From Paramoeba atlantica (Eukaryota > Protista > Discosea), in NCBI GenBank assembly GCA_977017575.1, contig CDRNVI010000020.1:1-64000 (forward strand): a stretch of 64,000 nt of DNA. Reading direction: 5' to 3'. A program made the position numbers and the translations under genes. This document shows positions 5,235 to 57,516 of the stretch, one piece after another. Within the stretch, counting starts at the first letter, position 1. Every line of letters starts with the position of its first letter. The notes under the pieces are model-generated. The model was not told the DNA's origin. It did not search any database and worked only from the letters and a program-made list of their open reading frames with translations.

Positions 5235-5526
5235 TACCCGAGGTTTAATTATAATTATTATTAGTTTACGTGATGAAATTTAGACGAGTATATTATAAGA
5301 GTTTACGAAAAGAATTTTAGGAAGTGTGCAGTGGTTAACACCCCTCGTTTATACACCCCCCAATAAATACTGGTGGGCTGATTGCTTGTGGAAGGAGGAA
5401 AAACTAAGAAATTTACATACATTCATATCCCCCCCAATGGACCTACTTGGTTCGCATAAAAAAAAAAATTGGTTTCATTTTATTTATTCTTGTTCATTAT
5501 GTGTGAGAAAGAAGACGCTGATTTCT

Positions 5527-5718
5527 ATAAGTATACGTTTAGAAATTTAGGATGATTGATATAATGGCCCTTCGGGGCACATAATATTTATATTATGAGA
5601 TATGATTTGTTTGTTTTGTTTATATAAGTGTACGTTTAGAAATTTAGGATGATTGATATAATGGCCCTTCGGGGCACATAATATTTATATTATGAGATAT
5701 GATTTGTTTGTTTTGTTT
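5527..5718 (+). repeat. Tandem duplication (~97 bp x2) of a retroelement 3' UTR module with a cUUCGg hairpin
   Basis: Near-identical units, each containing GGCCCTTCGGGGCAC. Confidence 0.85.
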
Positions 5719-5801
5719 AGAGATTTCATTTATTTAGTTTGGTATAGTGACACTCCTTCTCTAACCTTTTTATTGCGCCCGCCCACCAACCCCCAACCAC
5801 T

Positions 5802-5998
5802 TCGCGGAGTTGGCGGACGGGATGCCCGTTCGTAAGTAAAGGAGTTTGTTGTGGATTTGTTTCAAATACTGTAAGTTTGATTGAAATGGCCAGGTACCTT
5901 AATTTCTTTTCATGGATAGGTGGTGAGGATACTAAAGCAGTTGAATTCTTTGAATTGCTTTATGAAGAAAGATATTACATGATTTAGGAATTGGTTTC
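5802..5998 (+). repeat. ~200-bp direct repeat of 3289-3488 (plus-strand 3' UTR module)
   Basis: TCGCGGAGTTGGCGGACGGGATGCCCGTTCG...GATTTAGGAATTGGTTTC occurs at both sites with few mismatches. Confidence 0.9.
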
Positions 5999-6058
5999 AT
6001 TTTATTTATTCTTGTTCATTATGTGTGAGAAAGAAGACGCTGATTTCGGGCTCTGGAA

Positions 6059-7775
6059 ATGCCTTCGGAGCGAACGGATCCGCGAGAATCAACGTGCTCA
6101 CCACCGCCACCGTCACCTGTGACACAGCAGACGGGGAAGTGGCGCATCTGCATCAAGAAATCGTTCGCTGTGGCAGCTGACGCCATACAAACCGCTTCAA
6201 ACGCAATGTCCGATACAGTTTTCAGCTCCGCAGATAACGTACAATCTGCAAATAACGTGCAACGCGGGGAACTCTACGACTCTCCTTCGGCGCAAAACGA
6301 AGACGTGCATGCACAAATTTTGACAGAACAGAAGCGGCTTCCATCACCACAACCGGTTGACATGCAGCCAATGCCCCCGGCCATGCAGGGCATCCTGCAA
6401 AGCTCTTCGTCGGACGTGATCCCCAACGTTGCTACAGGGGAAGCGATAGACGAAGGAACCACTTTCCACGAATGCATGTCTCCTTCGATATGCGTAGAAA
6501 ACTCTCGCACAGAAAACCCCCCCGAAGAAGCAGAACACCTTCCCGCCGAAAGAAGAAAGCACCCGAGGAGCGACCTCCGCCGCCACCGCCGCCACCCCCA
6601 CCAACACCCCCGCCTCCGCCCTCGCCCGCTCCACCACCATCTCCTCCACCTCCGCCTCCTCCTCCGCCGCCTCTTCAGTCGACGTCACCTTCGACTCCAC
6701 CGTCTCCTCCACCGCCCCAGCAGCCATCGCCGACACCACCGCCGACGCCATCGCCGACGAGAACGCCATCATTGCCGCCACCATTGCCAACGCCAAGAAC
6801 GCCAATGCCAACGCCACGGGCAACCCGAAACCAAGAGAGACAACAGTCTTCTGGAAACTCACCGTCTTCGCCTCCACTGCGTTCCTCCATACCGCCGCCT
6901 TCGTCGTCTCAATTGATGTCGCCGTCCACTCGACCATCACCACAACATACGAATAGTGAAGGAAAATCGAGTAGTACAATCAAAATCAAGAATGCAAATT
7001 TCACATTTGATTTCTTTAAGCGCCGTGGTAAACAGCTCAATTTGATGCAGAAAGAAGCGAGAAACGTCAATCCCATCATTCGTGAACCTGATGGTAGCAT
7101 AAACATTAAAACGAACAATGCTAAGTGCACTGCGTTCACGAACCAAAGCACGGAACTTACGTATGCTAATAGTTAGTTAGTTATTATCCAGCCATTTGTC
7201 TGCGAACAGATGTGGCTGCCTCACTTCACGCGTAGGTCGCGTTGCCGGTGCTCCACGCGAGGAGTAATCTTCTAGCACGAGAGCGGTTGGCTCAATCATA
7301 TAAGAAGACACCGGACTTTAGACAGACATTACCCTAGTTATTTGATGCCTTGTTTTATTGGCATTGGGCAAAACCATCTATAGGAAAGGTGTAATGCCCT
7401 AGTTCTTTAGCATCTTGCTATTTTGATGCCGGGTACCTCCTTTCGTAAGCTTTCTAGTTCGCTTACATATTGTACGCATCTATACCAATATCGTATGTAT
7501 CACTTGTTCCATATAAGTCCTGTATTTCATACGACGTACTTCCTGCCTATGATATCATAAATGGGAAACTTTAATTTAAGTTTCTGAAATCAACGGACCC
7601 TTTCTTCTGCCATAAACTTCGTAAAATAAGGTAAACAAAGAAATCAACAAGGTACACGTATGCTAATGCTGCCACCCCGTCGCCAAAGGATCCCATCACA
7701 ACCGATGACATTGTGCTACGCCCTCTGAATCCGTCGCATAAAGCTATGGAAAATTATCGTCGGATACAAGCTTAA
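6059..7775 (+). pseudogene. Proline-rich ORF of unknown function, interrupted by a SINE-like insert
   Basis: ORFs 6059-6916 and 6472-7176 are probably one frame shifted near the C-run at ~6515; excising 7171-7667 restores '...TELTYANAATPSPKDP...IQA*' ending at 7775. Confidence 0.45.
7171..7655 (-). mobile_element. 485-bp SL-tipped SINE-like retroposon with a 12-bp TSD
   Basis: TSD ACGTATGCTAAT at 7159-7170 and 7656-7667; 5' tip is the last 11-12 nt of the SL (GTACCTTGTTG); 3' tail (AACT)3; two bulged-hairpin motifs; no long ORF. Confidence 0.8.
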
Positions 7776-56200: not shown

Positions 56201-57516
56201 ACGGCTCTTAGGCTAGGGAAACATGGTGGGTCTATAGTGGGCGGTAAGCTAGATTCCTCTGGCGTCTCTGAAGGGTACGCGGGGTCAGGAAAATCTGTTG
56301 TTGGTGATGGCTGTGTGGGAGGTGGGTCCGCCCCGTAGCATTGAATTGAATGGGCTTCCTTCTTGGTCAACACAAAATGTTTGTTGCACACCGTGCAAAG
56401 AAATCTGCCTTCACGTGCCCATCACTCTAGCGGTATGCCTTCGGCGTGTCGGGAGGCCACATGATTATAAAAAGCTTGCCATTTGCCGCCGTGGGATTGT
56501 GCGGACCACGCACATCCGTCTGCCGGACAGTACCGACGTTCCGGGAGCGGCGGGTCCCCCGCAGAATGAAGAGGTGGCACGACAGCTTCCGTTGCAGGAC
56601 CAGCTAGAGTCACAGCGCGGTGAGGGTCGCATAGTACGGTCTCCTGAGTTGAGTCAGTCTCGTCGGTTGGGGATACAGGAATCGATAAATCAAAGCTAGG
56701 AGGATTGCTCAAGGTAACAGAGAACGAGGTGGGGGGAGCAGGTTGCGGTGAGACACAATTTCGTTTACGTGTGCAGAGGTTTAGCGTCACAGGGGGGTCA
56801 TGACCTGGTGCGGCAACGTCCTTGGAACGAAGTGAAAGCAGACCACGCGTTTTCAATATAATGCTCCCGACCAGGCATGCGACTGTCCAAGTCACCGTGC
56901 ATCCTAGGGCGAGGACGTTCCCTACAATAACACTAGTGTACTTTAGTATGAAGAAGACGATCGTCACCAGTACGTATGCAAACTGTATGTATGTGATGGG
57001 AACTGTCAATAGGCGCCTCCACTGCGCCGTGCGGGCTGGGGCGTGTGCACGCTTACAGCACTGGTGTCTGCACGTCGACTTTACCTTGCAGCTGTGGTGG
57101 CACGGTTTCGTGGACAGATTTTCCTGCGTCGCGTGTGGCCGCGTGAATTCCGTACCAGTGTTGAGACCGCGCTTGCAACAACTGTGTTTGCATGTCAGTT
57201 TGTTTTTACATATGTGTTTGCAAAGATTAGTGGAATCTTCGCGAGGGAGATCAGAAATTTTTACCGGTGAATCCGTCGGAGAAGTTTTTGCGTCGTGGGG
57301 GTTTGGAAGCAAGGAATCCTTCAGGGGGCGGTTCTTATGTCCGTGGCACAAAGGTAAGGGTGGAGTTTCAATGTGTTGGCCCGAGCGTATGGCTACGGAG
57401 CGAGTCAACGCGACCATTTGGAGAGGATTAGGAAATAAATCAACAAGGTACAACAAGGTACAGAAACAACAAGGTACAGAAACTGTATCTTTATCGTTAA
57501 AACTGTATCTTTATCG
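53220..57516 (-). mobile_element. CRE family B element, full length (one in-frame TGA at 56422), with a stuttered SL
   Basis: ATG at 57417 (MVALTRSV); ORFs 56422-57456 and 53335-56391 are in frame across TGA ('GIPLE*WAREGRF', where homologs have WW); RT 'GVQQGDPLGPLLF...WYLDDG'; RLE 'RPGDVVLP...DFAVTH'; short UTR and poly(A). Confidence 0.93.
57441..57516 (-). ncRNA. Stuttered SL-like block (four overlapping partial copies)
   Basis: Minus strand: A8, CGATAAAGATACAGTT, TTAACG...CCTTGTTG (34 nt), TTTCTGTACCTTGTTG, TACCTTGTTG, then UTR. Confidence 0.82.

What the first reader, a model, noticed from the sequence alone, without database searches (positions are those of the whole stretch)
7159..7667. 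A 485-bp SL-tipped SINE-like element with a clean 12-bp target-site duplication
Seen: ACGTATGCTAAT flanks the insert on both sides, and removing it restores the interrupted plus-strand frame. The insert starts exactly at the TSD edge with the last 11-12 nt of the SL, carries two bulged-hairpin motifs, and ends in (AACT)3. The target is not SL sequence, so this is the most direct evidence that the SL travels with the RNA. Inference: a non-autonomous retroposon processed by trans-splicing and mobilised by a CRE protein in trans. The SL match is short, so it depends on its position for significance.
Basis: partly seen in the sequence, partly recalled or inferred. Interest (0 to 1): 0.8.

Follow-up and report, generated by a model that had tools for sequence, protein, structure and literature searches.

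The report
One-off chimeric retrocopy with spliced-leader tip
A young 485-bp insertion that splits an open reading frame in a kinetoplastid-type protist is a single-copy patchwork of three RNAs (spliced-leader tail, end of a recombinase retroelement, 3' end of a LINE), most likely stitched by a LINE reverse transcriptase, not a SINE family.

Summary
A perfect 12-bp target-site duplication flanks a 485-bp insert on the minus strand. The insert starts with the last 11-12 nt of the spliced leader (SL) and ends in (AACT)3. Removing it extends the + strand ORF by 35 codons.

The insert has three pieces:
- an SL tail;
- the last 62 nt of the terminal 'B' repeat of a Ngaro/PAT-like tyrosine-recombinase (YR) retroelement, 100% identical to 12 genomic copies;
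- the last 7 ORF nt, stop codon and 3' UTR of a LINE, 100% identical to a copy on contig C40.

Both internal joints are unique in the 45.7-Mb assembly, so this is not a SINE family. The partner LINE looks APE/L1-like, not CRE. All 12 exact source B copies have TG, not AG, before the SL joint, and 3 nt (TTG) are shared there. Canonical trans-splicing at this point is therefore not supported; reverse-transcriptase template switching fits better.

Four other independent derivatives of the same 3' UTR also carry short SL tails, each with a different middle piece. Three of them have their own duplications.

The closest known kind is the LINE-made bi- and tripartite chimeric retrogene. This scan has already noted SL-headed retroelements elsewhere in this genome.

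The parts
7159..7170 (.). Target-site duplication, left copy (ACGTATGCTAAT)
   Evidence: Exact 12-nt direct repeat, (D9). It directly abuts the (AACT)3 end of the insert.
7656..7667 (.). Target-site duplication, right copy. The T at 7656 could also be SL nt -12.
7645..7655 (-). SL tail, the last 11 nt of the spliced leader (GTACCTTGTTG). Its last 3 nt (TTG, 7645-7647) are shared with the next piece.
   Evidence: the same block heads other elements in the window; 1258 genomic hits against 31 for the control; published euglenozoan SLs.
7586..7647 (-). Last 62 nt (positions 165-226) of the 226-nt terminal 'B' repeat of a Ngaro/PAT-like YR retroelement with a B-A-B end structure
   Evidence: 100% identity to B copies. 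B always ends ..CCGTTGATTTC and is followed by varied flanks; 12 exact copies, all with ATTG upstream.
7171..7585 (-). 3' end of an APE-type LINE: last 7 nt of the ORF (7579-7585), TAA stop (7576-7578), 3' UTR, and (AACT)3 tail (7171-7182)
   Evidence: 99-100% identical to the 3' ends of LINE copies on C40, C1, C3 and C30, where an RT-bearing ORF runs into it.
7186..7319 (-). Conserved structured 3'-terminal module (three stem-loops), the likely handle recognised by the LINE RT
   Evidence: About 80% identical in LINE families with other tails, (CA)n, (AACAAT)n and (ATCT)n. Consensus fold has 38 pairs, 3 with compensatory changes.
7331..7434 (-).
   Evidence: Weak matches at 69-72% in other loci.
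6361..7176 (+). Interrupted host ORF (proline-rich). Without the insert it continues through 7668-7775.
   Evidence: No homologues found, so its status as a gene is unverified.

Best explanation
This is a dead-on-arrival, one-off chimeric retrocopy made by target-primed reverse transcription. An APE-type LINE enzyme nicked the host ORF. It primed on the (AACT)n tail of a LINE RNA and copied its structured 3' UTR up to 7 nt before the stop codon. The cDNA then continued on the last 62 nt of the B terminal repeat of a YR-retroelement RNA. Finally, through a 3-nt TTG overlap, it continued on spliced-leader sequence, either a free SL exon, SL RNA or the head of an mRNA, for 11-12 nt. The 5' end was then joined to the target, leaving a 12-bp duplication. 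Shown: the three-part anatomy, the duplication, the uniqueness of the joints, the identity of the sources, and the lack of an AG at the SL joint. Inferred: that the joints are template switches, their order, and which SL-bearing RNA was used.
For: Duplication and boundaries. Three sources at 100% identity. Both internal joints occur once in the genome. All 12 exact B copies have ATTG, not AG, before the joint, with TTG shared with the SL end. B holds no SL relic: (p about 0.24). Four more independent derivatives of the same 3' UTR carry short SL tails, and each has a different middle piece and LINE breakpoint: C4 (duplication ACATCCCGATGGA, SL 13 nt, 24-nt piece, LINE from nt 157); C2/C13/C12 (duplication ACCATGTTTC, about 100-nt piece, from nt 186); C27 (108-nt piece, from nt 79); C1/C3 (16-bp duplication, two stacked SL suffixes joined inside the ORF at ..AAATG|CAATAT, no AG). 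Stacks of partial SL tails, also at window 57441-57485, cannot come from one splicing event. The 3' module is conserved and structured. The partner's RT is closest to L1 ORF2p and its relatives have an APE-like N-terminus. Tripartite LINE chimeras flanked by direct repeats are documented (PMC2104539).
Against: No RNA data, so no template or switch was observed directly. The B piece stops exactly at the retroelement's terminus. An RNA 3' end there would explain this, but so would a DNA-level junction (rival 2). In the C4 sister copy the SL joint does fall just after an AG in 4 of 5 source contexts, so some SL tails here may come from truly trans-spliced RNAs. No intact full-length copy of the exact partner LINE was found, so the enzyme source is inferred from relatives at 43% identity. 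I did not locate the SL RNA gene itself.
Confidence: 0.6

Rival explanations
1. Read-out transcript from an unassembled donor locus. A YR retroelement sits directly upstream of a LINE 3' fragment that starts 7 nt before the stop codon. An RNA starting inside the terminal B repeat, 62 nt from its end, runs into the LINE 3' UTR. The LINE enzyme retroposes it in trans through the 3' module. Only the SL tail is added by a jump at the RNA's 5' end.
For: The 62-nt piece ends exactly at the integration boundary of the YR element, where every genomic copy meets a different flank. A TATTTATA motif lies 15-22 nt upstream of the start of the 62-nt piece. This model needs one template switch fewer.
Against: No such donor junction exists in the assembly. 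No other retrocopy starts at that B position. The four sister chimeras each have another middle piece and breakpoint, which would need a separate lucky donor locus each time.
Confidence: 0.25
2. This is a SINE-like non-autonomous retroposon family whose RNA is trans-spliced with the SL and mobilised in trans by a CRE (restriction-like endonuclease) retrotransposon.
For: The SL tail lies inside the duplication. The 3' end is shared with a LINE and the insert is non-coding. CRE-like elements headed by the SL are abundant in the same window.
Against: The composite is single-copy. There is no AG acceptor at the joint in any of the 12 exact source copies. There is no pol III-type head. The 3' part belongs to an L1-like/APE-type LINE only 19% identical to the window's CRE-like RT.
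Confidence: 0.07
3. Not a retroposition: a DNA-level rearrangement or an assembly artefact that happens to be flanked by a 12-bp repeat.
For: Chance 12-mer pairs within 1 kb are expected a few times per 64 kb (my estimate). No empty-site allele could be found.
Against: The repeat abuts both independently defined element ends exactly. All three pieces lie in the same orientation, with the LINE tail at the 3' end. Removal restores the frame. Sister copies show the same architecture with their own duplications.
Confidence: 0.03

Closest known systems
LINE-made chimeric retrogenes (U6-L1 type in mammals; bipartite and tripartite WEIRD/Mg-SINE/MGL chimeras in Magnaporthe grisea, PMC2104539)
   Same: Copies of different transcripts are fused head to tail in one orientation, with the LINE 3' end as the 3' piece. 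A short direct repeat flanks the whole (14 bp in the fungal tripartite case, 12 bp here). These chimeras are explained by one or two RT template switches during target-primed reverse transcription. A small nuclear RNA is a favoured 5' partner.
   Different: The 5'-most piece here is only the last 11-12 nt of the SL exon, not a whole snRNA. The middle piece is the terminal repeat of a tyrosine-recombinase retroelement. The host is a kinetoplastid-type protist, and my searches found no report of such chimeras there.
Dinoflagellate retrogenes tagged with relict DinoSL (PMC6050394, PMC5585692)
   Same: A DNA-encoded remnant of the spliced leader at the 5' end marks a sequence that passed through RNA.
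   Different: In dinoflagellates the SL is taken to come from trans-splicing of the mRNA. Here the joint lacks an acceptor AG in the source and shares microhomology with the SL end. The template is also not an mRNA of a cellular gene.
CRE/SLACS/CZAR elements of trypanosomatids (PMC12278014)
   Same: Retroelements of kinetoplastids that are physically associated with SL sequence.
   Different: Those elements insert site-specifically into SL RNA genes and use a restriction-like endonuclease. This insert sits in a non-SL target, carries the SL's 3' tail inside its duplication, and uses the 3' end of an L1-like LINE.
SINEs with a LINE-derived 3' tail (stringent LINE/SINE pairs)
   Same: A non-coding insert that shares the structured 3' end and microsatellite tail with a LINE and is flanked by a duplication.
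   Different: No multi-copy family, no pol III promoter head, and a unique patchwork body.

Membership tests
SINE / non-autonomous retroposon family | Many copies sharing the same full-length structure at different sites | tested here: not met
   The full 485-bp composite and both of its internal joints occur once in the 45.7-Mb assembly.
SINE / non-autonomous retroposon family | Head derived from a pol III gene (tRNA, 7SL, 5S) | tested here: not met
   ARAGORN found nothing. Rfam found nothing at gathering score or at E<=1.
SINE / non-autonomous retroposon family | 3' end shared with a partner LINE, flanked by a target-site duplication | tested here: met
LINE-mediated chimeric retrocopy (template-switch chimera) | Pieces of different transcripts fused directly in one orientation, with the LINE 3' end as the 3' piece | tested here: met
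   The SL tail, the YR B-repeat end and the LINE 3' end each match separate sources at 100% identity.
LINE-mediated chimeric retrocopy (template-switch chimera) | One target-site duplication flanks the whole chimera | tested here: met
   12-bp perfect repeat at both ends.
LINE-mediated chimeric retrocopy (template-switch chimera) | Each chimera is an independent event (unique joints, varied breakpoints) | tested here: met
   Five derivatives of the same 3' UTR break at LINE nt 71, 79, 157, 186 and inside the ORF, each with a different 5' piece.
LINE-mediated chimeric retrocopy (template-switch chimera) | The RT actually switches templates | not testable with these tools
   This needs biochemistry or RNA and cDNA data.
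SL-tagged retrocopy of a trans-spliced RNA (DinoSL-retrogene type) | SL remnant at the 5' end, inside the duplication | tested here: met
   11-12 nt of SL directly next to the duplication.
SL-tagged retrocopy of a trans-spliced RNA (DinoSL-retrogene type) | The SL joint coincides with an AG splice acceptor in the source sequence | tested here: not met
   All 12 exact source copies read ..AAATATTG before ATTTC. The sister copy on C1/C3 joins at ..AAATG. Only the C4 sister falls after an AG.
CRE clade (SLACS/CZAR/CRE1/2) partner | Restriction-like endonuclease type RT protein | tested here: not met
   The partner's RT scores best against L1 ORF2p (E 4e-27, against 2e-17 for R2). Relatives carry a weak N-terminal Exo_endo_phos match (E 0.009, nearly full profile length). 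Identity to the window's CRE-like RT is 19%.
CRE clade (SLACS/CZAR/CRE1/2) partner | Site-specific insertion into SL RNA genes | tested here: not met
   The target is a unique ORF with no SL sequence.

The most novel reading that the evidence does not exclude
In this protist, many SL tips on retroelement copies may not be written by trans-splicing at all. The reverse transcriptase may jump onto the 3' end of the free SL exon (the first-step splicing intermediate) or onto other SL-bearing RNA, or the SL exon may prime second-strand synthesis. An SL relic in DNA would then not prove that the template was trans-spliced. It would also make the SL the kinetoplastid counterpart of U6 in L1 chimeras.
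Probability: 0.3. Interest if true: 0.75.

Novelty: new variant of a known kind. Interest (0 to 1): 0.45.

Why it matters
SL remnants in DNA are used, for example in dinoflagellates, as proof that a sequence was copied from a trans-spliced mRNA. This case is cleanly bounded by a 12-bp duplication, and its SL tail sits at a joint that has no splice acceptor in any source copy. In four sister events of the same LINE, short SL tails cap unrelated pieces. That points to a LINE reverse transcriptase that readily switches templates and often ends on SL sequence. If so, it bears on the open question of how SL-headed retroelements in this genome renew their leader. It also cautions against reading every SL relic as a splicing record. 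The insert itself is an ordinary dead retrocopy that broke one unverified ORF.

Tried and rejected
- Empty-site evidence, all blank. The immediate flanks are unique in the genome. An exact 28-nt empty-site pattern found nothing in metagenome contigs. The ORF's C-terminal part has no protein homologues.
- Donor locus, blank. I searched for a YR element inserted into the LINE at nt 70/71, on the left-hand side and the right-hand side.
- SL relic inside the B repeat, rejected. This would have made the 62 nt a spliced 5' UTR, but the local alignment score is no better than shuffles.
- The true SL RNA gene, not found. SL+GT occurs 163 times, but these are dispersed copies of another SL-headed family. 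SL+GTB gave 23 dispersed hits, and the one I read is again a retroelement head. The SL identity therefore rests on its core matching published euglenozoan SLs and on its genome-wide behaviour.
- Preferred SL stop at 11-12 nt, not supported as a general rule.
The 5' end of that element was not examined.
I reran it from references.

Full report
**Observation**

The window is contig C20:1-64000 of a 45.7-Mb assembly. The 12-mer ACGTATGCTAAT occurs at 7159-7170 and 7656-7667 and brackets a 485-bp insert, 7171-7655.

Read on the minus strand, the insert begins GTACCTTGTTG and ends in (AACT)3. The 11-mer is the end of a block..GATACAGTTTCTGTACCTTGTTG, that heads five other retroelements in the window. 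Each of those continues with a different sequence after TTG. The block's core is the conserved core of published 39-nt euglenozoan spliced leaders, which likewise have 11 nt after TTTCT and end in TTG. Genome-wide the 11-mer occurs 1258 times against 31 for the reversed control. Its presence exactly at the insert's edge is therefore not chance.

Removing the insert and one repeat copy lets the + strand ORF 6361-7176 continue for 35 codons.

**Anatomy**

A search of the whole assembly shows that the insert is composite. Positions below are in element orientation.

- Nt 1-11 are the SL tail.
- Nt 9-70 are 100% identical to the last 62 nt of a 226-nt repeat 'B'. B closes a retroelement with an RNase H-bearing ORF and a B-A-B end of about 443-bp period. 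This is the split-direct-repeat layout I recall for Ngaro/PAT-like tyrosine-recombinase elements; I did not test for the recombinase itself. B always ends ..CCGTTGATTTC, and a different flank follows in every copy.
- Nt 71-485 are the last 7 nt of an ORF, its TAA stop, a 3' UTR and the (AACT)n tail of a LINE. They are 100% identical to the copy on C40 and 99% to those on C1, C3 and C30, where an RT-bearing ORF runs straight into this sequence.

**Is it a family?**

No. The joint between the 62-nt piece and the LINE, and the joint between the SL and the 62-nt piece, each occur once in the assembly. There is no tRNA, 7SL or 5S-like head. The insert is a one-off.

**Which enzyme?**

- The RT of the parent LINE scores best against human L1 ORF2p (E 4e-27) and less well against R2 (2e-17).
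- Its closest full-length relatives are 43% identical and have ORFs of up to about 1190 aa.
- In the 1057-aa relative I scanned, the N-terminus gives a weak Exo_endo_phos match of nearly full profile length, followed by RVT_1. That relative also matches L1 ORF2p best, and its C-terminal tail aligns with the parent's last 154 aa.
- The parent's RT is only 19% identical to the CRE-like RT in the same window.

The partner is therefore an APE-type LINE with a microsatellite tail, not a CRE element. Only 5'-truncated copies of the exact family were found.

The last ~135 nt before the tail (nt 337-470 of the element) are about 80% conserved in LINE families that end in (CA)n, (AACAAT)n or (ATCT)n. 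They fold into three stem-loops with three compensatory pairs. I infer that this is the handle the enzyme recognises.

**Was the SL put on by trans-splicing?**

For this copy the evidence says no. All 12 exact genomic B copies read ..AAATATTG before ATTTCTTTG, and none has an AG. The SL end and the B sequence share TTG at the joint. B contains no degenerate SL relic upstream.

**Sister events**

The same 3' UTR occurs in four further independent derivatives. All have a short SL tail at the 5' end.

- C4 is triplicated with its 4.9-kb host repeat. It has the duplication ACATCCCGATGGA, 13 nt of SL, a 24-nt piece and the LINE from nt 157.
- C2/C13/C12 has the duplication ACCATGTTTC, whose last 5 nt overlap the SL. 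It carries a one-mismatch SL tail, a T-run leader of about 100 nt like the one at window 61374, and the LINE from nt 186. A 4.4-kb insertion later split it.
- C27 has 11-12 nt of SL, a 108-nt piece partly derived from another dispersed repeat, and the LINE from nt 79.
- C1/C3 has a 16-bp duplication and two stacked SL suffixes joined inside the ORF at ..AAATG|CAATAT, with no AG and TG shared.

Only the C4 joint falls after an AG in its source contexts, in 4 of 5. Stacked partial SL tails also occur at window 57441-57485. One splicing event cannot make such stacks.

**Mechanism**

The best fit is target-primed reverse transcription by the LINE enzyme with template switching. The cDNA starts on the LINE RNA tail and leaves that RNA at a variable point. 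It continues on another RNA and ends on SL sequence. The 5' end is then joined to the target, often with 1-5 nt of overlap.

This is the architecture of known LINE-made chimeric retrogenes. One example is a tripartite chimera flanked by a 14-bp repeat in Magnaporthe grisea (PMC2104539).

One alternative cannot be excluded. A single read-out transcript might start inside the terminal B repeat of a YR element lying next to a LINE 3' fragment. That would explain why the 62-nt piece stops exactly at the element's terminus. However, no such donor locus is in the assembly, and each sister chimera would need its own donor.

Which SL-bearing molecule served as the last template is open. It could be a free SL exon, SL RNA or an mRNA head.

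**Limits**

- There are no RNA data.
- The SL RNA gene itself was not located.
- No empty-site allele was found.
- The YR element's 5' end was not examined.
- The host ORF has no homologues, so it may not be a real gene.

**Novelty**

SL relics on retrocopies are known from dinoflagellates (PMC6050394), and template-switch chimeras from mammals and fungi. My literature searches found no report of SL-tipped LINE chimeras in kinetoplastids. That is a limited search, not proof of absence. This scan has already noted SL-headed retroelements and possible template jumps on other pieces of this genome. This finding is one more instance. It is useful because it is cleanly bounded and its SL joint can be tested against 12 source copies.

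Noticed in passing
window 57441-57485 (minus strand): Three nested partial SL tails stand in tandem at the head of a CRE-like element, spaced 10 and 16 nt apart. The same kind of stack recurs elsewhere in the genome as 10-nt-spaced pairs in the hit list.
   Followed up: partly
window 5478-6047: A 48-nt sequence at 5478-5525 recurs at 6000-6047, 522 bp later. It also occurs in more than 25 other loci, several of them as pairs 522 bp apart. It looks like the terminal repeat of a second YR-type retroelement ending just upstream of the interrupted ORF.
   Followed up: no
window 6048-6535: The 5' part of the interrupted ORF region is 97-98% identical to loci on C54 and C43. The proline-rich stretch 6536-6794 matches many loci at 66-77%. 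The 'gene' may belong to a repeated proline-rich family or be partly repeat-derived.
   Followed up: no
L060-L063 (C2:38803, C3:18104, C3:71391, C3:184361): The SL followed directly by GT occurs 163 times, dispersed over the genome. The copies I read belong to one SL-headed family (SL + GTACATTTTGC..) whose SL heads are truncated to different lengths. They are not a tandem SL gene array.
   Followed up: partly
L032 2875-7324 (C2), also L031 (C13) and L036 (C12): A 4.4-kb element has inserted into the 3' UTR of a sister chimera, with a 9-bp overlap of nt 326-334 (a probable duplication). The whole locus is present on three contigs.
   Followed up: no
L067-L071; L064 1501-1524: A 24-nt motif (GAACGTTATCTAACAATACAGAAT) lies just after ..CTAG in four unrelated contexts. 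Different sequences or A-runs follow it. In L067 it sits about 40 nt downstream of the stop codon of what looks by eye like a YR-element pol ORF. It may be a short trans-spliced or terminal RNA module.
   Followed up: partly
window 7586-7594 and 7640-7648: The 62-nt B piece is bounded by the same 8-mer (TTGATTTC) at both ends. The internal copy is where the SL joins and the terminal copy is the element's end. This may be a recombination or strand-transfer site of the YR element. Separately, three of the five SL-tipped derivatives of this LINE start at the T that corresponds to SL nt 28. From memory, and unchecked here, that position is pseudouridylated in trypanosomes.
   Followed up: no
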